Positions 13,673 to 37,145 of a DNA stretch of 64,000 nt are shown here, piece after piece. The notes under the pieces were generated by a model. It made no database searches. It was not told the origin of the DNA and saw only the letters and a list, made by a program, of their open reading frames with translations. The translations under genes were made by a program, and so were the position numbers. Positions within the stretch are counted from its first letter, which is position 1, and each line of letters starts with the position of its first letter. The stretch is from the sequence record PP456877.1. One strand, written 5' to 3'.

Positions 13673-16123
13673 TTACTTAATGGCACGATTCACAGCAGTG
13701 TTAATTGCATTGGTAAGAGCTACAATGTAATCAACTAGAACGGTGTGGTTTTCAGCCGATTGGCCAACAACTTCCCATACTGCACTAGCTAGTTGCCGGA
13801 CTTTCTTTTTACCGGCTTTACTATCCATGCTAGCCACTTTAGAGATATCACGGTTAGCTTGGTCAAGACGACGTACACCGCGGTTACCGCTAACTTTTAG
13901 AGAGGCATTACCAAGACCAATTAGAACTTTAGAAAGTTTCATTAGTTCAGTAACGTCCTTACGGCTAACTTTAGCAGTAGCAGTACCGGTAGCACCCCAT
14001 TCACCAGTTGGAAGTGCAATAGCAGCTAATCGTTCAATATCTTTACTAGTGCGACCAGTTACATCACGGCCAGACTTCTCGAAGGTAAAACTACCTTCTA
14101 GTTTTCCACTGATAAATGAACTCTCAGGATATTTCTTAACAGGTACTTCTAATTTAGTTGCTTCTTCTAGAGCCTTATCAATAGCTTCTTCACTATCAGC
14201 TTCAATAGCAGTTGCTAGATGACCAACTAAACGTTCGATGTATTCACCATCGATTTTAAAGCATTTGTTAATAATATCGCTAATACGACGAACCTCTCCA
14301 GCAACACCACGCACTAGATTATCATCACCTTTTAGAATACCATTAATTTTGATTTCTTTACTTTCAAAATTATCAGTGTCTTTAAGCTTAACTAGAAGTT
14401 GGTCAGCTTTAGTATTAGCTGCGGCGAGTTCTTTTTGGTTAGCTTTAACATGGATGGATGCATTTGCACCTTCAGCAATATTGTCGATAATATTTCGAAC
14501 AAACTTACCAATAGTGCTATTAAATGATTCTAGTGAAGTAACCATCGCCTTATAGTAATCTTCTAGATTACCATAACCATAATCTTCCATTGCTGGAATA
14601 CCAGGTGAATAGACATCAAAGGCATTGTGTAGACGTTCTAAGCAGCTATTAGCATGAACGATGAACTGAGGGCTATACTGCTTATGTTCTAGTCCATAAT
14701 GCAGAATCTCAAGCATTGATTCATTTGATGCCTGCTCTTCAAGTAATTGACCAATGGTCTTCTTACTGTCCTCAACTTCATCTTCAAGATCATCAGCTTC
14801 AGCAACTGCCTCATCAGCAGCTTCATCTGCTTCTTCAACATCATCTTCAGTTACTTCTACATCGACATCTGGAATATCAATTTCACCTTCAGCTAGTTTC
14901 TCTTCGATGTCATCTTCAGAGACATCATCATCAGCTTCAGCGACAATTGTTTCACTATCATCTTCAACTGCACCTTCTTCAATTGTTGGTTCAGCAATAG
15001 TAGATGCTGTTTCAGTTTCAGCAACTGTTTCTTCAGTTTCAGCTTCATTAATTAATACATCAGTAGAATCACTGTCATCATTAGTTAATTCTTCTTCAGC
15101 TTCATCCCGAACTTCTTCCAATTCGCTTAAGCCGTCTTCAGCTACTTCTGCTGTTTCGGCAGCTTCTTCTACAATTGGATCAGTTACAGCTACTTCTTCA
15201 TCAACTGCTACGATTTCATCCGGTTCAGCTTCAGCAGGGATACTTTCAGATTCCGTCTCTACTACTTCAGCTACTTCACTATCAGTTGTATCCGGCGTGT
15301 CTTCCACGGTTTCAACAACTTCTGTTTCAGCATCAGCTACAGCTGGTTCAGTAACATCGACTTCTTCAGTTTCAGTAATCTCTGCATCAGGTTCATCATT
15401 GGAACTTTCATCAGCAGTTGTCTGTTCAGCACCGGCTTCTTCCGGTGTTACATCATCATCGATACCAGGAACTGCTTCGCTTACAACTTCACCAGCATCT
15501 AATACTTCATCCGGTAGTGTATCCATAGTGGATGACACGGGTTCATCACCAGCTGGAAGTTCTTCAGACAGTGGTGCAGGAGGCGGAGTTTCGTCACCAA
15601 GTGGGGTTTCTTCAGTGGGAGTTAATTCCACTGCTGTTTCACCAGGTGCTTCTGCAACAGGCACTAGTTCAGTATCATCAGCCGCATCTTGTGCAGCTTC
15701 AATAATTTCAGTGGTTGAATCTAAAACCTCTTTACCGCCTTCAGAAATTGTACCGATTTCTTCAGCGATTTCAGCTTCAGCAACTTTAACTGCTTCTTCG
15801 CCTTCTTCGACACTAGTGGTAGCTAGCGGTTCAGGAATACTTTCCTCAACAACAGTTTCTTCTGGTACAACTTCTTCAACAATTACTGCTGACTTATCAG
15901 CAGCATGTGCTGTTTCTTCATGTTCTTCAGCAGAGATAATATCAGTATCTGTTTTAACAGTTTCATTCTCAATAGTTGCAGATGCATCATTATCTTTCTT
16001 TAAATCTTGAACTAGTTCATGATCATCTTTAACAGATGTCTCGACTTTGGATACATCCTGTTCCACAGCCGTACCATCTTGGTTCTCAAGGCTGGCTACA
16101 TATTTGTGAATATTTACCATCAT
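13673..16123 (-). CDS. gp97: Inner-body/internal head protein with very long acidic propeptide (gp97)
   Basis: About 500 E/D/A/V/T-rich residues, then SMLE, AMED and TSLES prohead-protease-type (S/A/G-x-E) sites. Confidence 0.8.
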   Translation of the reverse strand: MMVNIHKYVASLENQDGTAVEQDVSKVETSVKDDHELVQDLKKDNDASATIENETVKTDTDIISAEEHEETAHAADKSAVIVEEVVPEETVVEESIPEPLATTSVEEGEEAVKVAEAEIAEEIGTISEGGKEVLDSTTEIIEAAQDAADDTELVPVAEAPGETAVELTPTEETPLGDETPPPAPLSEELPAGDEPVSSTMDTLPDEVLDAGEVVSEAVPGIDDDVTPEEAGAEQTTADESSNDEPDAEITETEEVDVTEPAVADAETEVVETVEDTPDTTDSEVAEVVETESESIPAEAEPDEIVAVDEEVAVTDPIVEEAAETAEVAEDGLSELEEVRDEAEEELTNDDSDSTDVLINEAETEETVAETETASTIAEPTIEEGAVEDDSETIVAEADDDVSEDDIEEKLAEGEIDIPDVDVEVTEDDVEEADEAADEAVAEADDLEDEVEDSKKTIGQLLEEQASNESMLEILHYGLEHKQYSPQFIVHANSCLERLHNAFDVYSPGIPAMEDYGYGNLEDYYKAMVTSLESFNSTIGKFVRNIIDNIAEGANASIHVKANQKELAAANTKADQLLVKLKDTDNFESKEIKINGILKGDDNLVRGVAGEVRRISDIINKCFKIDGEYIERLVGHLATAIEADSEEAIDKALEEATKLEVPVKKYPESSFISGKLEGSFTFEKSGRDVTGRTSKDIERLAAIALPTGEWGATGTATAKVSRKDVTELMKLSKVLIGLGNASLKVSGNRGVRRLDQANRDISKVASMDSKAGKKKVRQLASAVWEVVGQSAENHTVLVDYIVALTNAINTAVNRAIK

Positions 16124-17399: not shown

Positions 17400-19043
17400 T
17401 TATTCTGCTTGGAATTTAGTGTTAATTACACTATTATAAAGTCCAGTTGCAGTATTTGCGTAACGCATTGCTTCACGAATAATGGAGTCATGTTTAGGTG
17501 CACTATCTGTAATAATAGATGCTACCTTACGTGATACTTCTTCGATCTGTTCTTTAGAAACATCGTCGATTTTATCACTCTCTAGTTTCCGTGAAAGTTG
17601 ATCAACATCATCTTCAAGTTGCTTAATGGCTTTAACAATATTCCGACCGCCAGTGATAACATCAGCTGCATCATCAACCAGATTACGTAGAGCTACCGCT
17701 TCTTTCTTAGCTTGACTCTTATCAAAGTTCTTTAAAGTCACTTCAGTGCCAGGTTCTGCGGCTGTCTCATCATCCGTTAGATATACTTGAGTAGCAGTCG
17801 TAGTTACAAGCTTATTACCCGGTAAAGTGTTAGATGTACTAGCGTAGTGTTTGAGAGGTCCATCTTGAAGTTTGTCCATCTTCTCAACTAGTTCACTAGC
17901 ATCATTACGCTCTGGATCCCAAGCTTTAAGCACAGTACCAATATTCGTTAGGTAGGTAGCATAGTCTTTTGCATATACAGATGCCATCCATTTAACGATA
18001 GGGCCATATCCAACGTTAGCTGAAGGCTGAATGAATTTACCATTAGCAAATACGGGTCCACCATTTTTAACAGGAACCGTTAATTCACTGGGTATATTTT
18101 CAAACTTAGCATTTTGGATAGCTAAAATGAGTTCATCAACTTTTACACTCACACGCGGTACACTATTCTTAAGACTATCCCATACGTGGCTAATAATTTC
18201 ACGTAGTTTAGCAATAGCTTTCTTGATATAAGCAAGCGCCTTACGACTTAACTCTTTAATATCCTCAGTTGAAATCTTAACTGGATATAAATGACTTTTA
18301 CCACCAGTCGTATAGTTTTCTAATGAGCTAGTTAAAGTATTATCACCAAGTACATGACGATGTGGTAAGAGTGCAGAATGAATAAATGCAGCTGTACTTT
18401 GACTGATACCATTAATACCAGCTTGTCGAACAAGAGCTTTAATCGACTCTAGGGCATATGCGGTATTTAGACCTTGATTAATATCTTGCACTGCTGTAGT
18501 AACTACTTGTGCATTACCAATGTCCATGAAATCAGTAGGTTTATCCATATCCACTGCAACAGCGATCTGTGGCACCACGCCATTATGCGCTAGTGGAATA
18601 GAACTATCTTTGGCAGCCTGATCAGCGATTTGCTGAGTTACTGTTTCACCACCTTGTGGTTCCTCTCCTTCGGCACCTGCTGGAATAACTGTTTCAACAG
18701 CAATATTAGGTTGTTCAGGAATAGGGGGTACTTCTGTTACTACATCTGTTTCAACTACGGTAACTGGTACAGCTGGTTGTTCAACTAGAGTAGCAGCTGG
18801 AGTCTCAACAATAACGCCATTATTAGGAGTATTAACAATAGTGGTATCTGCATCCACTGGTGCAGTTGGTGTTACACCAACATTATTGTCAGTCACATCT
18901 TGAATAGTATTTTCAGGTACAGCGTCTTCAGAAATACAATCGCCACTAGTCATGGCTGCTACTTTATCAACTGCTGTTTCAGGAATAGGTACCTCAGTAT
19001 AGTCTTCTAGACTATCTAGATACTCATTGAGTTTAAATGTCAT
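17400..19043 (-). CDS. gp95: Inner-body protein (gp95)
   Basis: SLED, ALES, SLEN and STED sites. AGxxGIxQxxAAFxH block shared with gp93 and gp94. Confidence 0.8.
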   Translation of the reverse strand: MTFKLNEYLDSLEDYTEVPIPETAVDKVAAMTSGDCISEDAVPENTIQDVTDNNVGVTPTAPVDADTTIVNTPNNGVIVETPAATLVEQPAVPVTVVETDVVTEVPPIPEQPNIAVETVIPAGAEGEEPQGGETVTQQIADQAAKDSSIPLAHNGVVPQIAVAVDMDKPTDFMDIGNAQVVTTAVQDINQGLNTAYALESIKALVRQAGINGISQSTAAFIHSALLPHRHVLGDNTLTSSLENYTTGGKSHLYPVKISTEDIKELSRKALAYIKKAIAKLREIISHVWDSLKNSVPRVSVKVDELILAIQNAKFENIPSELTVPVKNGGPVFANGKFIQPSANVGYGPIVKWMASVYAKDYATYLTNIGTVLKAWDPERNDASELVEKMDKLQDGPLKHYASTSNTLPGNKLVTTTATQVYLTDDETAAEPGTEVTLKNFDKSQAKKEAVALRNLVDDAADVITGGRNIVKAIKQLEDDVDQLSRKLESDKIDDVSKEQIEEVSRKVASIITDSAPKHDSIIREAMRYANTATGLYNSVINTKFQAE

Positions 19044-33143: not shown

Positions 33144-34658
33144 ATGTTTGAGTTATTGTTGTCTTCTGGACTAACAAATACGCCTATATATTCCGATCCT
33201 TATCCAGGTCCTAAAACACTGATAGCTGGGACAAGGGAATTAGGTTTGTATGGTGAAACAACATCTTCAGAATTATTTGGTTATGATGATGCAGCTAAAT
33301 TAGTTAATATGACATTTGGAACAGTAATCAATGATGGACAACCATGGTTAAAGTTCTCTAATAAAAATGTTACTTGTTACATACCAAAGAAACCAGCTCG
33401 TAAATCAATACAAAAATCACGGCTTAATAATGCCGGACTCCGTAATGGTGACTATGAAGTTAGATTTATGGGGAACATTTATAAATTTGGTTTATTAACA
33501 ATGGCTGGTGCCACATCAGAATGGCAAAGGTTACTTTATAATGTTCACGTATCTAATTTAAATGGTGCTAACTGGCCTTATAAATTTACAGATAATGACT
33601 TAGGTATTAACCAAGCGGTCGCTGGTGGTATTAGCACTGATGGTACTACTAACTGGGGAAGAGACCCAGGTAGTGATCCAGTTAATGACCAGCTCTATCG
33701 TGGCTACTATGCGATTGATATAACTAGCTCGTCAAGTAGTGAAACGGGTGCTGCAACCCAAGGTTGGCGTCCAGTGGTTTATGCTAGTGGTACATATCCA
33801 TTCGTTAAAGATAATGTTATTAAACTTACTGATTTTGAAACTGATAACGAAATGGCAGCAGGTGCCCAAATAGGTAACTTAGTCTATTATTACGGTGGTA
33901 AGAATAATGCTAATACTGCTCTACGTACATTGAATTTAGCCACGGGTAAGTTAACAACATTACAACCAACTGGTACACCTATAGCAGTTAAACAATGCTC
34001 GGCTGTTGCATTTAATGGTAAAGTATATTTCTATGGTGGTGAAAATGCCACAGATGGTGTACTCACTAAAGGTATGCAGTGTTATGATCCTGCAACTAAT
34101 ACATGGGAAATAAAATCACCAGGTACGATAGCTTGTCGGTATGCACGTGGAACTAGTCTTAATGGGTTAATCTACATATTAGGTGCAGCTGATACAACTG
34201 CAACAAATAATCGTGGATTTACATTAATGTACAATCCAACTACAGATACATATACCAGTGGTGCAGCATTTAATGATACTGGGGTATATACCCAAGATTA
34301 TTCAGTGAGTGTTTATAATAATAGCGTATGTGTTATTGGTGGTATGGTTGGTGCCGGTGTTAATACTGGAATCATATCGTACAATCAAACCAACAATAAT
34401 TGGTCTAAACCAATAACTACAGGTATACCTCTTGGTGCAGCTATTAATATACGCCCATCTGGTGAACTTTATGTAATCGCTGGTGAAAATCAAAATAATG
34501 CACCAATTAAGTATTATGAACCACGATTAGCACGATGGATAAATTTAGGTAATTTAGAAACTGGTTTAGTGGATGCAGGTTTTGCCAATACGTTTAATAA
34601 CGATGGTAAGATTTATGTTCTAAACGGTAATCAGAATTTAAAATACCAAATTAGTTAA
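33144..34658 (+). CDS. Tail-associated protein with Kelch beta-propeller (gp83 position)
   Basis: N-terminal GPKTLIAG..LGLYGE domain, then Kelch-type blades (YYYGG, YFYGG..CYDPATNTW, YILG..YNPTTDTY). Confidence 0.75.
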   Translation: MFELLLSSGLTNTPIYSDPYPGPKTLIAGTRELGLYGETTSSELFGYDDAAKLVNMTFGTVINDGQPWLKFSNKNVTCYIPKKPARKSIQKSRLNNAGLRNGDYEVRFMGNIYKFGLLTMAGATSEWQRLLYNVHVSNLNGANWPYKFTDNDLGINQAVAGGISTDGTTNWGRDPGSDPVNDQLYRGYYAIDITSSSSSETGAATQGWRPVVYASGTYPFVKDNVIKLTDFETDNEMAAGAQIGNLVYYYGGKNNANTALRTLNLATGKLTTLQPTGTPIAVKQCSAVAFNGKVYFYGGENATDGVLTKGMQCYDPATNTWEIKSPGTIACRYARGTSLNGLIYILGAADTTATNNRGFTLMYNPTTDTYTSGAAFNDTGVYTQDYSVSVYNNSVCVIGGMVGAGVNTGIISYNQTNNNWSKPITTGIPLGAAINIRPSGELYVIAGENQNNAPIKYYEPRLARWINLGNLETGLVDAGFANTFNNDGKIYVLNGNQNLKYQIS

Positions 34659-34664
34659 CGAAAT

Positions 34665-34689
34665 AAACCCTCCCATTACGGGAGGGTTT
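34665..34689. terminator. Bidirectional terminator
   Basis: AAACCCTCCC-attac-GGGAGGGTTT between convergent genes. Confidence 0.8.
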
Positions 34690-34760
34690 TATGATGTGTC
34701 GAAGTTTATATTAGCAGTAATGATCAATTGATAATATTTAATTAGGAATACCTTCCATTT

Positions 34761-35129
34761 TTAATATCCTTCATTGAGTAGTTCTGCTAAAGCACGTGCC
34801 TGTGAAATATCAGTAGAAGCAAAAACATCAGAAAGATAGTTATCATGTTCTTTTGCATTCTGACGTAATTCATCCATTAGATGTTTATTAGATACAGCCC
34901 ATACTTTCCACAGATTTTTATAATCATCATATTTAGGATTATATCCGTCTAGTGGTGGTTTTCCTTTACCAGCTTTCCAGTGGTTGGAGTATTTGCGATA
35001 TCCTTTACAATCTAACTGCCAAGCTTCCTCAATTGTTCTACCATCAGGAAGCCTTGCGTAAAGAGCCGAGAATCTTTTGTCACCAACAGATGAGCATTCA
35101 TATCCTCCTCGGCGCTTCCACTGATATAT
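34761..35129 (-). CDS. NADAR-like protein (DarT1-antitoxin type), 122 codons, no canonical start; missed by ORF track
   Basis: Open frame (I)YQWKRRGGYECSSVGDKRFSALYARLPDGRTIEEAWQLDCKG...LSDVFASTDISQARALAELLNEGY*. It begins at ATA overlapping the gp82 stop. Confidence 0.7.
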   Translation of the reverse strand: MYQWKRRGGYECSSVGDKRFSALYARLPDGRTIEEAWQLDCKGYRKYSNHWKAGKGKPPLDGYNPKYDDYKNLWKVWAVSNKHLMDELRQNAKEHDNYLSDVFASTDISQARALAELLNEGY

Positions 35130-37045
35130 TACTTTGGGTTCTTATGGGTATTAATAAACTTCTCTAGTAGGGTGTCCATTTTAGGAGCGCCCATGATCTT
35201 CTGTGTGATTTCAATAGCGTTAACCCTACCGCCTGTTAAGTTTACACCAACTTCACGGCGATGGTGTTCACTAATTCCTTCCATCATTGAGAATTCCATC
35301 ACACATGTTTCACGTGCAATATTTAGAATCTGACTAACGTTAGGATATGTCGACACGATGTCAAGGTCGGCGATATGACAGAAGATTAAGGTTTTATAAT
35401 TTGGTAAATCTTTAACACACTGCAATCCATTTGGACCTGCCATGTAAGATGGCAATGTAACAATCCAGTCATTATGACCAATAACATACTGATCTAACTC
35501 ATGTACCATCTGATCAGAACTCGAACCAATAACACATGGATCTGGTCTATTTAGATACCAGAAATGCATGTCATCACATAGTCGTTTTGGGTTAGAGCTA
35601 AAGTTCTTATAATCGGATGCTTTAGAGAATAGACTTATAGAACGACCAAGATCATTTACTTGTTCATCAAGTTGTTCTAGTCGAATGGAGTCGATGATGT
35701 TATAAAGACCATATTTGATTTTATGCTTAGTTTGCATCTCACGGTGCCAATCGATACCTCCAAGATGCATCGTTTCCTCAAATGTTAATTTACCAAACTC
35801 CATCATGTATCTAATGGAATCACCATACGTAAAGTTATCATTTAATATAAAATCATCTACCCTGATCCATTCATTACTGCCTATATTTTTAATATATTTA
35901 GTAATAACACCACCAGGGCGGTCTACCAATTGTTTATTAAAACCTTCAATAAAATCTTCTAAGTCCTTATCATTTTTAATGGTCGTAGATTTATCGATGT
36001 TTAGTTCTTTTCTAAGAATAGACTCTAACCGATAGTTAGGATCACGTCCTTTAGCTAATCGAGTTACTCGATAAGTTGACATAGAATCGATGCATTGAAA
36101 ACTAGCGGGTGCTGTAATCCAATGCCATTGATCCTCTGGTCCTTTAGATTTAGTGACCCCAGATGCAGTGGTGGTCATAGGCTCATCAATCTTAAAATGG
36201 AAATACCTATAATTCTTAGGTACCGATGGATCAGAAAAAATATCAGCTGGATTAACGCCATAGTGTTCTAATGTTTTTAAGATTCTGCCAATGTCGAAGC
36301 TAATATTCCAGAATGCGAAGAAATCTGGTTTCCAGGTATGTAGTCGTTTAAAACATTCAATAATAATATCTACTGGTGTTTCAACAACCATTACTTCAAT
36401 ATCTAGACCACGTTCTTTAATTAGATGTGATAGTACCTCTTCTTTTTGTGCTTGTTCTAATGTCTCTTTCACTGGATCTTCAATATCACTAACCCATCGT
36501 TTTAAATAGGCTAGGAAAGCTTTGTTCTTATGTGTAACTGACATACAGATAATCTGGCCATCGTTCTCAGCTTCATAAACGTTGGTTTCGATGTCACCGC
36601 CAGCAACAGTGTTTAGAGAGATTAGACCAGGATAACGTTCTTGATAATCATGCTTCAGATAACAGGTTGAACTAACATCACTGCCATATAGGTAAGGACT
36701 ACGCGCTAGTTGACGAAGAGATCTAGCCGAATAGTCACCTAGGATTTTACTAATCTTACGTTTCATGTCAATTTGAGTTGACATGTATTTAACTAAGTTA
36801 CGCTCATATTCGTAATCTTTCTTTTCTTTATGGTTACGCATTCCTTTTGCGGTAATCCAAAAAGGACGCTGGTAGTTTTCCCACATCCTTAAATTATTTG
36901 CAGTTGTACCATCTTCAAAATGAATTCGTTCTTTAACGAAATGTGCATCTGTAAACTTACCAAATTGATCAGTACAATAAGTAATATGTTTGGCTTCAAT
37001 GCCCTTAATCTTTTTCTTATTTGTAACCTGTTGTTCATTAGACAT
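35129..37045 (-). CDS. gp82: Split family-B DNA polymerase, exonuclease plus motif-A subunit (gp82)
   Basis: ExoI GDIET, ExoII WNISFD, ExoIII YNIID, palm motif A DLDIVSTYP. No motif B or C. Confidence 0.85.
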   Translation of the reverse strand: MSNEQQVTNKKKIKGIEAKHITYCTDQFGKFTDAHFVKERIHFEDGTTANNLRMWENYQRPFWITAKGMRNHKEKKDYEYERNLVKYMSTQIDMKRKISKILGDYSARSLRQLARSPYLYGSDVSSTCYLKHDYQERYPGLISLNTVAGGDIETNVYEAENDGQIICMSVTHKNKAFLAYLKRWVSDIEDPVKETLEQAQKEEVLSHLIKERGLDIEVMVVETPVDIIIECFKRLHTWKPDFFAFWNISFDIGRILKTLEHYGVNPADIFSDPSVPKNYRYFHFKIDEPMTTTASGVTKSKGPEDQWHWITAPASFQCIDSMSTYRVTRLAKGRDPNYRLESILRKELNIDKSTTIKNDKDLEDFIEGFNKQLVDRPGGVITKYIKNIGSNEWIRVDDFILNDNFTYGDSIRYMMEFGKLTFEETMHLGGIDWHREMQTKHKIKYGLYNIIDSIRLEQLDEQVNDLGRSISLFSKASDYKNFSSNPKRLCDDMHFWYLNRPDPCVIGSSSDQMVHELDQYVIGHNDWIVTLPSYMAGPNGLQCVKDLPNYKTLIFCHIADLDIVSTYPNVSQILNIARETCVMEFSMMEGISEHHRREVGVNLTGGRVNAIEITQKIMGAPKMDTLLEKFINTHKNPK

Positions 37046-37115: not shown

Positions 37116-37145
37116 CATAAAGCCTCCCCTAGGGGAGGCTTTATG
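37116..37145 (-). terminator. Intrinsic terminator
   Basis: Palindromic CATAAAGCCTCCCC-ta-GGGGAGGCTTTATG. Confidence 0.8.

What the first reader, a model, noticed from the sequence alone, without database searches (positions are those of the whole stretch)
34761..35138. Hidden start-less NADAR-like ADP-ribose eraser, possibly fused to the DNA polymerase by a -1 frameshift
Seen: a 122-codon ORF behind gp82 is absent from the ORF track because its first ATG gives only 38 aa. Its motifs ECSS, FSA, TIEEAWQ, LSDVF and QARALA line up by eye with DarT1-associated NADAR antitoxins (EISS, LSAF, SVExAFQ, FTDIEF, CQAxxAA), including the conserved Glu and Asp positions. The last gp82 codons are AAC CCA AAG TAA, giving a C_CCA_AAG slippery heptamer (35132-35138), and the ORF lies exactly in the -1 frame (CCC AAA GTA ATA TAT CAG). 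Known: A_AAG is shift-prone in bacteria; NADARs remove DarT1 guanine ADP-ribose from DNA, which blocks phage replication. Inference: either a fraction of gp82 carries a C-terminal eraser (about 761 aa) at the fork, or the gene starts at an AUA overlapping the stop (TAATA in place of TAATG). Both are unusual.
Basis: partly seen in the sequence, partly recalled or inferred. Interest (0 to 1): 0.88.

Follow-up and report, generated by a model that had tools for sequence, protein, structure and literature searches.

The report
Frameshift-fused enzyme domain on phiKZ polymerase
Behind the DNA polymerase gene of the jumbo phage phiKZ lies a conserved 122-codon enzyme-like reading frame with no start codon, and comparison with about 45 related phages indicates that ribosomes reach it by slipping back one base at the end of the polymerase gene, so that some polymerase molecules carry an extra domain.

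Summary
The window is a phiKZ-type phage. A start-less 122-codon frame (34761-35138, minus strand) follows gp82 in the -1 frame, and C_CCA_AAG directly abuts the polymerase stop codon.

The frame encodes a real protein: phrog_9995 matches at E 2.7e-55, the family has more than 800 relatives, substitutions are mostly synonymous, and the AlphaFold model has pLDDT 97.

Eighteen related loci have the domain in the -1 frame. Every one carries C_CCA_AAG, G_GGA_AAG or A_AAA_AAG inside the short stretch from which the -1 frame is open. The background rate of such heptamers is about 1-2 per 10,000 codons. Canonical start codons come and go: thirteen of the eighteen have none.

Other relatives have polymerase and domain in one frame, or in one frame separated by a single TAG. 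I conclude that a programmed -1 frameshift makes a polymerase-domain fusion of about 88 kDa (confidence 0.8). An AUA start is unlikely.

The NADAR idea is only weakly supported. No profile similarity was found. Fold hits were weak but enriched for NADAR, and the domain's fusion partners (DUF4326, SLOG) belong to ADP-ribose processing. I found no prior report of this recoding.

The parts
35129..37045 (-). gp82, the divergent family-B DNA polymerase of phiKZ (zero frame, 638 aa, 74.2 kDa)
   Evidence: ORF list; RefSeq annotation; phrog_3011 DNA polymerase at E 6.8e-242; mass. No Pfam or PDB sequence hit.
35132..35138 (-). Slippery heptamer C_CCA_AAG in the polymerase frame, the proposed -1 shift site
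   Evidence: Sequence. Conserved in 10 distinct related loci although the preceding amino acid varies, and replaced by G_GGA_AAG or A_AAA_AAG in others. Background rate about 1-2 per 10,000 codons. These three heptamers are described as highly shift-prone in E. coli (PMC5009743).
35129..35131 (-). Zero-frame stop codon TAA directly after the heptamer
   Evidence: [quoted passage not shown]
34761..35138 (-). The -1 frame reached from the heptamer: one linker codon, the 122-codon conserved domain (34764-35129) and its stop (34761-34763)
   Evidence: Translation; phrog_9995 at E 2.7e-55; 502 close and 840 representative homologues; invariant residues; AlphaFold2 pLDDT 96.9; mainly synonymous divergence.
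34761..34877 (-). The annotated 38-aa ORF PHIKZ082.1, a gene-caller fragment of the 122-codon frame
   Evidence: phrog_33573 is the same fragment.
34665..34689 (-). Intrinsic-terminator-like hairpin after the domain frame. There is none between the polymerase and the domain, so they form one transcription unit.
   Evidence: The matching hairpin upstream of gp82 lies at 37116-37145.

Best explanation
The 122-codon frame is not a separate gene with an odd start. It is a C-terminal extension of the phiKZ DNA polymerase gp82, reached by programmed -1 ribosomal frameshifting. On C_CCA_AAG, the Pro and Lys tRNAs (or the P-site Lys tRNA alone, with the stop codon waiting in the A site) re-pair one base back. 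The ribosome then misses the TAA and reads a Val codon followed by the domain. The products would be the 74-kDa polymerase and a fraction of an approximately 88-kDa polymerase-domain protein (761 aa). What is shown: the heptamer, the frames, the coding constraint on the domain, the conservation pattern across relatives, and the existence of natural one-frame fusions. What is inferred: that slippage happens, and how efficiently. A second, less certain inference (about 0.45) is that the domain is a small hydrolase acting on ADP-ribose or ribosyl adducts or derivatives, analogous to and perhaps distantly derived from NADAR. Tethering it to the polymerase would bring it to replicating DNA inside the phage nucleus.
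For: 1. The domain is a real protein under selection.
2. Eighteen distinct loci have the domain in the -1 frame. All 18 have an X_XXA_AAG heptamer in the polymerase frame inside the permissive stretch of 3-123 codons. The chance per locus is 0.0007-0.03.
3. Thirteen of these 18 have no ATG, GTG or TTG at all before the conserved core. The codon at the family's first position is ATA, GTA, ACT, ACA or GTT, or lies inside the polymerase ORF.
4. On a tree of the domain, loci with and without a start codon are interleaved, while the heptamer is constant within each clade.
5. The base before the heptamer's Pro codon is always C although that codon encodes N, P, S, A, L or V. The Lys codon is always AAG although AAA is the commoner Lys codon in gp82, 34 to 17.
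6. Natural fusions exist. L034 is one ORF of at least 845 codons. P0350 (698 aa) is polymerase-like plus the domain and is encoded next to a PhiKZ-type capsid gene. P0261/L049 is the C-terminal piece of a split polymerase plus the domain.
7. In L042 and L047 the polymerase and the domain share one frame, separated by a single TAG with no start codon after it.
8. There is no terminator between the polymerase and the domain.
9. C_CCA_AAG, G_GGA_AAG and A_AAA_AAG are the heptamers known to be shift-prone in E. coli, and a zero-frame stop directly after the site is known from some dnaX genes (PMC5009743).
10. For the function: Foldseek lists are enriched for NADAR. Fusion partners are DUF4326 (18 of 78), SLOG families (7), RNase H, a PIF1/UvrD helicase and a 2OG-Fe(II) oxygenase. 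[quoted passage not shown]
Against: No protein or ribosome data were available, so slippage itself is not observed. No convincing stimulatory RNA structure follows the phiKZ heptamer (z-score -1.75). The GGAGGA/TCCTCC hairpin seen in four relatives is degraded in phiKZ. No Shine-Dalgarno-like element lies upstream. A_AAG shiftiness depends on the host's Lys-tRNA set, which I did not check for Pseudomonas. L034 could be a homopolymer assembly error. A tight derived clade (D6/Psa21-like) has the domain in the +1 frame, mostly with GTG or TTG, so free-standing expression is viable in some relatives. For the function: no sequence-profile link to NADAR exists, and no fold hit is significant.
Confidence: 0.8

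Rival explanations
1. The domain is a separate gene. It is translated by initiation or termination-reinitiation at the non-canonical ATA codon that overlaps the polymerase stop, giving a free 14-kDa protein.
For: The family is mostly free-standing proteins of about 122-130 aa in other phages. PhiPA3, 201phi2-1, Viktualia, PS119XW and L045 have ATG or GTG at or next to this codon. The D6/Psa21 clade mostly has GTG or TTG.
Against: Other start-less relatives carry GTA, ACT, ACA or GTT at this codon. In the A_AAA_AAG clade the domain starts 43-103 bases inside the polymerase ORF with no start codon. Start codons are scattered on the tree while the heptamer is constant. No Shine-Dalgarno sequence precedes the ATA codon. 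This reading does not explain the synonymous-site conservation of the heptamer.
Confidence: 0.1
2. The frame change happens in the mRNA through transcriptional slippage by the phage RNA polymerase, not on the ribosome.
For: The A_AAA_AAG clade has a run of six A, and phage multisubunit RNA polymerases are poorly characterised for slippage.
Against: [quoted passage not shown] Bacterial transcriptional slippage is described for runs of about nine A or T (PMC5009743). The strict X_XXY_YYZ register with the polymerase frame in all 18 loci is the signature of tRNA re-pairing.
Confidence: 0.03
3. The frame is an untranslated relic of a gene that lost its start codon.
For: It has no start codon and is ignored or truncated by every annotation.
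Against: Nine of 10 differences between phiKZ and PA7 are synonymous, and third-position changes dominate all comparisons. All family-invariant residues are kept. The frame stays open in 47 Phikzvirus records and across several genera that lack a start.
Confidence: 0.02
4. On function: the domain is not NADAR-like. It is either a new fold with another chemistry on nucleotides or nucleic acids, or a non-catalytic polymerase accessory module.
For: Profile comparisons with NADAR are null. The best NADAR fold hits have E 0.39-9 and TM 0.39-0.54. Fusions to the polymerase, RNase H, a PIF1-type helicase and an AlkB-type oxygenase fit a general DNA-repair or replication role.
Against: NADAR-named entries make up 11 of about 46 non-family hits in the viral fold library and give the only PDB hit with TM above 0.4. 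The invariant Glu-x3-Gln-x3-Lys and a later invariant Asp resemble the Glu/Lys/acidic set described for NADARs (PMC11543638 and PMC11257639). The dominant partners, DUF4326 and SLOG, are ADP-ribose-network domains. A pure accessory module would not occur free-standing in N4-like phages.
Confidence: 0.45

Closest known systems
Bacterial dnaX tau/gamma recoding (A_AAA_AAG, -1 frameshift in a replicase subunit gene)
   Same: Both use a -1 shift on an X_XXA_AAG heptamer in a replication gene to give two products that share an N-terminal body. In a minority of bacteria the longer product comes from the shift, and the zero-frame stop lies directly after the site, as it does here (PMC5009743). A whole clade of relatives here uses the identical A_AAA_AAG.
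   Different: Here the gene is the catalytic family-B polymerase of a phage. The added part is a separate enzyme-like domain that exists free-standing elsewhere. No Shine-Dalgarno or stem-loop stimulator was found in phiKZ.
Phage lambda G/GT tail-chaperone frameshift (G_GGA_AAG)
   Same: Both are phage -1 frameshifts near the end of the upstream gene that give a minor longer product and need no strong stimulator. One relative (L029) uses this very heptamer.
   Different: The gene class and purpose differ. The tail-chaperone shift is found across the tailed phages, whereas this one is confined, as far as sampled, to the Pseudomonas-infecting phiKZ-like clade.
NADAR ADP-ribosyl glycohydrolases (DarG1-type antitoxins; T4 AdfN/gp30.3; E. 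coli YbiA)
   Same: Both are small alpha+beta domains with invariant Glu, Lys and acidic residues, and both are phage-encoded. There is weak but repeated fold resemblance. The domain occupies the same position as NADAR and Macro in fusions with DUF4326 and SLOG.
   Different: No profile-level similarity was found. The domain is shorter (122 versus about 150-190 aa). The Glu-Lys spacing is 8 rather than 7. There is no DarT partner. Activity is unknown.
NADAR or Macro domains embedded in replicase polyproteins of RNA viruses
   Same: In both cases an ADP-ribose-processing domain is physically tethered to the viral replicase (PMC9503650).
   Different: Those are in-frame polyprotein domains of RNA viruses. 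Here a DNA phage attaches the domain by recoding.

Membership tests
Programmed -1 ribosomal frameshift site (bacterial X_XXY_YYZ type) | Slippery heptamer X_XXY_YYZ in register with the upstream (zero) frame | tested here: met
   C_CCA_AAG at 35138-35132, in register with gp82.
Programmed -1 ribosomal frameshift site (bacterial X_XXY_YYZ type) | The -1 frame is open from the heptamer and encodes a protein under purifying selection | tested here: met
   125 open codons after entry, against 4 for the two other in-frame heptamers of the window. phrog_9995 at E 2.7e-55. Nine of 10 differences are synonymous.
Programmed -1 ribosomal frameshift site (bacterial X_XXY_YYZ type) | The heptamer is conserved across relatives beyond what the protein sequence requires | tested here: met
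   All 18 loci with the -1 arrangement have X_XXA_AAG. Synonymous positions are fixed. The background rate is about 1-2 per 10,000 codons.
Programmed -1 ribosomal frameshift site (bacterial X_XXY_YYZ type) | A stimulatory element: 3' structure, 5' Shine-Dalgarno-like sequence, or an adjacent stop | tested here: inconclusive
   The downstream fold has z-score -1.75, which is not significant. A 6-bp hairpin is present in only four relatives. A zero-frame stop directly follows the site.
Programmed -1 ribosomal frameshift site (bacterial X_XXY_YYZ type) | A trans-frame protein product is detected | not testable with these tools
   No proteomic or ribosome-profiling data were at hand. No paper in the library reports it.
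NADAR superfamily | Significant match to NADAR sequence profiles (Pfam PF08719 or PF08010, or solved NADARs) | tested here: not met
   No hit at E up to 10 for the ORF or for any of 42 family members. The PDB profile search finds no NADAR. hhalign against the T4 gp30.3 family gives probability 0.2-0.7%.
NADAR superfamily | NADAR fold: a five-helix core flanked by two small beta sheets | tested here: inconclusive
   The model (pLDDT 96.9) has helices flanked by short strands. The best NADAR hits are 8bau (TM 0.43, E 4.6) and viral NADARs (TM 0.39-0.54, best E 0.39, probability 0.47).
NADAR superfamily | Catalytic Glu and Lys seven residues apart, plus a later acidic residue | tested here: inconclusive
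   E34, Q38, D40, K42 and D101 are invariant in the family, but the Glu-Lys spacing is 8 and no tool aligned them to the NADAR residues named in PMC11543638 and PMC11257639.
NADAR superfamily | ADP-ribosyl glycohydrolase activity | not testable with these tools
   This is a biochemical property.
DarTG1-type toxin-antitoxin pair | Operon partner encoding a DarT ADP-ribosyltransferase | tested here: not met
   The neighbours are the polymerase and virion structural genes.
phrog_9995 (unnamed phage protein family) | Full-length match to the family profile | tested here: met
   Residues 5-125 of the translated frame match profile positions 2-123 of 124 at E 2.7e-55.

The most novel reading that the evidence does not exclude
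Across the phiKZ-like nucleus-forming phages, a previously unannotated enzyme domain is attached to the replicative DNA polymerase by several interchangeable routes. These are a -1 frameshift on three different heptamers, read-through of a single TAG, direct fusion, and possibly a -2/+1 event in the D6/Psa21 clade. The domain would be a new, minimal relative or analogue of NADAR that removes ADP-ribose-type adducts from DNA at the fork, and it would use the polymerase as its ticket into the phage nucleus.
Probability: 0.35. Interest if true: 0.9.

Novelty: new variant of a known kind. Interest (0 to 1): 0.8.

Why it matters
phiKZ is the model nucleus-forming jumbo phage, and gp82 is its essential polymerase (ASO screen, PMC12571901). 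Even so, a conserved 122-codon coding frame behind gp82 is missing or truncated in every annotation I looked at.

If the frameshift is real, the replicase exists in two forms, and a fraction of it carries an extra enzyme-like module. That bears on how replication proteins and counter-defence activities enter the phage nucleus. It would also add a clean, phylogenetically replicated recoding case in a catalytic DNA polymerase gene, with the three classical bacterial heptamers swapped between clades.

The work also defines a large protein family without any Pfam model (840 representative clusters). Its fusion partners place it in the NAD/ADP-ribose conflict network and next to DNA-acting enzymes. 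Finally, it gives gene callers a concrete rule for this locus.

Tried and rejected
- **Pfam.** I scanned the ORF and 42 family members. Only chance-level hits appeared and none to NADAR.
- **PDB sequence search.** The family profile gave only noise, such as ribosomal protein uL3 at E 0.008.
- **Profile-profile comparison.** I ran hhalign with the T4 gp30.3/AdfN family twice. The second run used a 256-sequence domain alignment in local, permissive and global modes. Probability stayed below 1%.
- **Foldseek against the PDB.** Nothing was significant.
- **RNA fold downstream of the heptamer.** It was not significant.
- **Pattern scan of IMG/VR for the phiKZ junction.** Only one contig matched, so it was of no use for statistics.
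- **Pfam on large proteins containing the domain.** Ten proteins of 1,110-4,009 aa were scanned. Eight gave no hit; the other two showed helicase/AAA domains (P0303) or RNase H (P0342). The origin of these large proteins stays unknown.
- **Literature.** Searches for phiKZ or Chimalliviridae together with frameshifting, and for PHIKZ082.1, found nothing relevant.
- **Rejected: sequencing error.** Forty-seven independent Phikzvirus genomes agree.
- **Rejected: pseudogene.**
- **Rejected: the 29-aa and 38-aa ORFs annotated inside the frame as real genes.**
- **Not done, by rule.** I built, modelled or searched no joined two-frame product.
Full report
**What is there**

Over the 901 bases searched (34600-35500), the window is identical to Pseudomonas phage vB_Pae3705-KEN49 and 99.7% identical to phiKZ. 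The feature lies on the minus strand.

- gp82 (35129-37045, 638 aa) ends AAC CCA AAG TAA.
- The -1 frame is closed by a stop one codon before the heptamer. It is then open from 35141 to the TAA at 34763-34761.
- That frame has no ATG, GTG or TTG until the ATG of a 38-aa ORF. RefSeq annotates only this fragment, as PHIKZ082.1. The KEN49 record adds a 29-aa out-of-frame ORF.

**The frame encodes a real protein**

- It matches phrog_9995, a 124-position profile, from end to end at E 2.7e-55. Profile position 2 falls on the second codon after the polymerase stop.
- A word-indexed search found 502 homologues, mostly 120-130 aa and none with a Pfam domain.
- An exhaustive profile search found 840 representative clusters.
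- In an alignment of 42 members, 26 columns are invariant, among them Y10, E11, S13, G16, D17, R19, E34, Q38, D40, K42, K55, D101 and Q110.
- AlphaFold2 gives a confident compact alpha+beta model, with pLDDT 96.9 and pTM 0.89.
- phiKZ and PA7 differ at 10 bases in the frame, and 9 of these are synonymous. All wider comparisons are dominated by third-position changes.
- The frame is therefore translated, although it has no start codon.

**How it is reached: the comparative survey**

I collected the polymerase-domain junction from four sources: GenBank phages, IMG/VR, metagenomes and one database protein. For each locus I tabulated the frame relation, the start codons and the heptamers. Five states appear.

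| Class | Arrangement | Loci |
|---|---|---|
| A | Domain in the -1 frame, no canonical start between the upstream stop and the conserved core, X_XXY_YYZ heptamer in the polymerase frame | C_CCA_AAG: phiKZ/PA7, Phabio, L015, L016. G_GGA_AAG: L029. A_AAA_AAG: Noxifer, L019, L027, L028, L030, L032, L043, L044 |
| B | Same arrangement and heptamer as A, plus ATG or GTG at or next to the first domain codon | PhiPA3, 201phi2-1, Viktualia, PS119XW, L045 |
| C | Domain in the +1 frame, overlapping the polymerase by 23 bases | A tight clade: D6, Psa21 and nine metagenomic relatives |
| D | One reading frame | L034, P0350, P0261/L049 |
| E | Polymerase and domain in one frame, separated by a single TAG with no start codon after it | L042, L047 |

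Further detail on three of the classes:

- **Class A, A_AAA_AAG loci.** The heptamer lies 43-103 bases before the polymerase stop and 3-39 bases before the first aligned domain residue.
- **Class D.**
  - L034 is a 201phi2-1-like contig with an ORF of at least 845 codons.
  - P0350 is 698 aa. Residues 29-531 are polymerase-like at 23-30% identity to gp82, and the domain is at 561-677. It is encoded next to a PhiKZ-type capsid gene.
  - P0261/L049 is 236 aa: the C-terminal piece of a split polymerase plus the domain.
- **Class E.** The polymerase ORF is otherwise free of in-frame TAG.

**Why this points to a programmed -1 frameshift**

- In-frame X_XXA_AAG heptamers are rare. They occur 2 times in 8,545 polymerase codons of these loci and 2 times in 17,982 codons of the window's long ORFs. 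The two others in the window are each followed by a -1 stop within 4 codons.
- Yet all 18 class A and B loci have one inside the permissive stretch of 3-123 codons. In phiKZ that stretch is only 3 codons. The chance per locus is 0.0007-0.03.
- The three heptamers found are the ones described as highly shift-prone in E. coli (PMC5009743).
- Synonymous positions of the heptamer are fixed. The codon before it encodes N, P, S, A, L or V but always ends in C. The Lys codon is always AAG, although AAA outnumbers AAG 34 to 17 in gp82.
- On a neighbour-joining tree of the domain, loci with and without start codons are interleaved, for example PhiPA3 beside phiKZ and PS119XW beside L015. The heptamer type is constant within each clade. 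The heptamer is the conserved feature, and the start codon is incidental.
- The codon at the family's first position behaves as an ordinary variable residue: Ile, Met, Val, Thr, Leu or Ser.
- The class D fusions show that the joined protein is viable. Class E shows a second recoding route to the same product.
- The polymerase and the domain share a transcription unit bounded by strong terminator-like hairpins at 37145-37116 and 34689-34665.
[quoted passage not shown] The same layout is known from dnaX genes in which the longer product comes from the shift.
- The predicted products are 74.2 kDa and about 88.5 kDa. This figure is the sum of separately computed masses.

**Weak points of the frameshift case**

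- Nothing here observes the protein.
- I found no significant RNA structure after the phiKZ heptamer (z-score -1.75).
- A GGAGGA/TCCTCC hairpin about 22 bases downstream exists in PhiPA3, PS119XW, L015 and L016, but it is degraded in phiKZ.
- The host's Lys-tRNA set was not examined.
- L034 could be an assembly indel.
- Class C is unresolved. Six of its 11 distinct loci have GTG or TTG at the first domain codon. Five have CTG, ACG or TCG, and L038 has no canonical start at all in the open stretch. All class C loci share an invariant GAAAAGAAG just upstream. Independent initiation, or a -2/+1 event on that motif, are both possible.

**What the domain may do**

- No Pfam hit for the ORF or for 42 family members at E up to 10.
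- No NADAR among the PDB profile hits.
- No similarity to the phage NADAR family in profile-profile comparison, with probability 0.2-0.7%. I built that family around T4 gp30.3/AdfN. I fetched it from NC_000866, an accession confirmed in papers.

At fold level no hit is significant, but the hit lists are informative:

- The only PDB hit with TM above 0.4 is a NADAR bound to ADP-ribose: 8bau, TM 0.43, E 4.6.
- In the viral fold library, after four family members, 11 of about 46 hits are NADAR or YbiA-type proteins, with TM 0.39-0.54 except one entry at 0.29, and best E 0.39 at probability 0.47. Seven more are DUF4326 proteins.

The domain's architectures are more informative:

- Of 78 multidomain representatives, 18 carry DUF4326, 7 carry SLOG domains (YAcAr, cpYpsA) and 3 carry RNase H. 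Single cases carry a 2OG-Fe(II) oxygenase, a PIF1/UvrD-type helicase, a guanylate kinase or DUF488-N3a.
- This domain therefore sits where NADAR or Macro domains usually sit.
- Its invariant Glu-x3-Gln-x3-Lys and later Asp recall the Glu/Lys/acidic catalytic set of NADARs (PMC11543638 and PMC11257639). The spacing differs by one residue, and no tool aligned the two sets.

My reading, at about 0.45, is a small hydrolase for ADP-ribose- or ribosyl-type adducts or derivatives, analogous to and perhaps remotely derived from NADAR. It would be tethered to the replicase, which would also carry it into the phage nucleus. This is inference. Membership in NADAR is not established.

**Novelty**

Full-text searches combining phiKZ, jumbo phage or Chimalliviridae with frameshifting, and a search for the locus tag, found no report of this. 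The mechanism is a known kind. The gene context, the clade-wide replication with interchangeable heptamers and read-through, and the unannotated domain family are new as far as I can see.

**Process notes**

- One notebook entry (checkpoint note) describes the length difference between L034 and 201phi2-1 at the junction more specifically than the operators' rule may intend.

Noticed in passing
L031:2001-2306 (same as L003:20-325), phage PhiPA3: The PhiPA3 polymerase gene carries a group I intron (Rfam RF00028, 71.7 bits, E 2.9e-17). RefSeq annotates only the upstream exon as DNA polymerase and leaves the last exon unannotated.
   Followed up: partly
L049:1800-2620: In this metagenomic relative the polymerase is split into two ORFs: a stop followed a few bases later by an ATG in another frame. 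The C-terminal piece is fused in frame to the domain (P0261, 236 aa).
   Followed up: partly
L008, L009, L018, L021-L026, L035, L037, L038, L041 (junction regions): In the D6/Psa21-like clade the domain is in the +1 frame and overlaps the polymerase by 23 bases. An invariant GAAAAGAAG lies just upstream. Five of 11 distinct loci lack ATG, GTG or TTG at the first domain codon, and L038 has none in the open stretch. A -2/+1 recoding event is possible but untested.
   Followed up: partly
L042:2266 and L047:2266 (junction): A single in-frame TAG separates the polymerase and the domain, with no start codon after it. The polymerase ORFs have no other in-frame TAG. Read-through, a suppressor tRNA or a code change could not be distinguished with loci of 3.6 kb.
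   Followed up: partly
window 35012-35101 (-) and 34761-34877 (-): The KEN49 and phiKZ records annotate a 29-aa out-of-frame ORF and a 38-aa in-frame fragment inside the 122-codon frame. Both look like gene-caller artefacts. PHROGs even holds a family (phrog_33573) made of the 38-aa fragment.
   Followed up: yes
window 15998-16004 (-) and 17730-17736 (-): These are the only two other in-frame X_XXA_AAG heptamers (both T_TTA_AAG) in long ORFs of the window. The -1 frame closes after 4 codons in both, so no extension follows.
   Followed up: yes
L003, L005, L015, L016, about 22 bases after the heptamer: A 6-bp hairpin, GGAGGA (the Gly-Gly codons) pairing with TCCTCC (the Ser-Ser codons), occurs in four relatives. 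It is degraded in phiKZ. It may be a local stimulator in those lineages.
   Followed up: no
P0243 (889 aa); P0260-P0383 (large proteins): P0243 holds two copies of the domain around a DUF488-N3a domain. Many proteins of 1,300-6,100 aa contain the domain; eight were scanned (1,360-4,009 aa) and none has a Pfam hit, so their origin is unknown.
   Followed up: partly
window 37116-37145 (-) and 34665-34689 (-): Strong terminator-like hairpins (13 and 11 base pairs) bracket the polymerase-domain unit. The region has four such sites against 1.1 expected.
   Followed up: no
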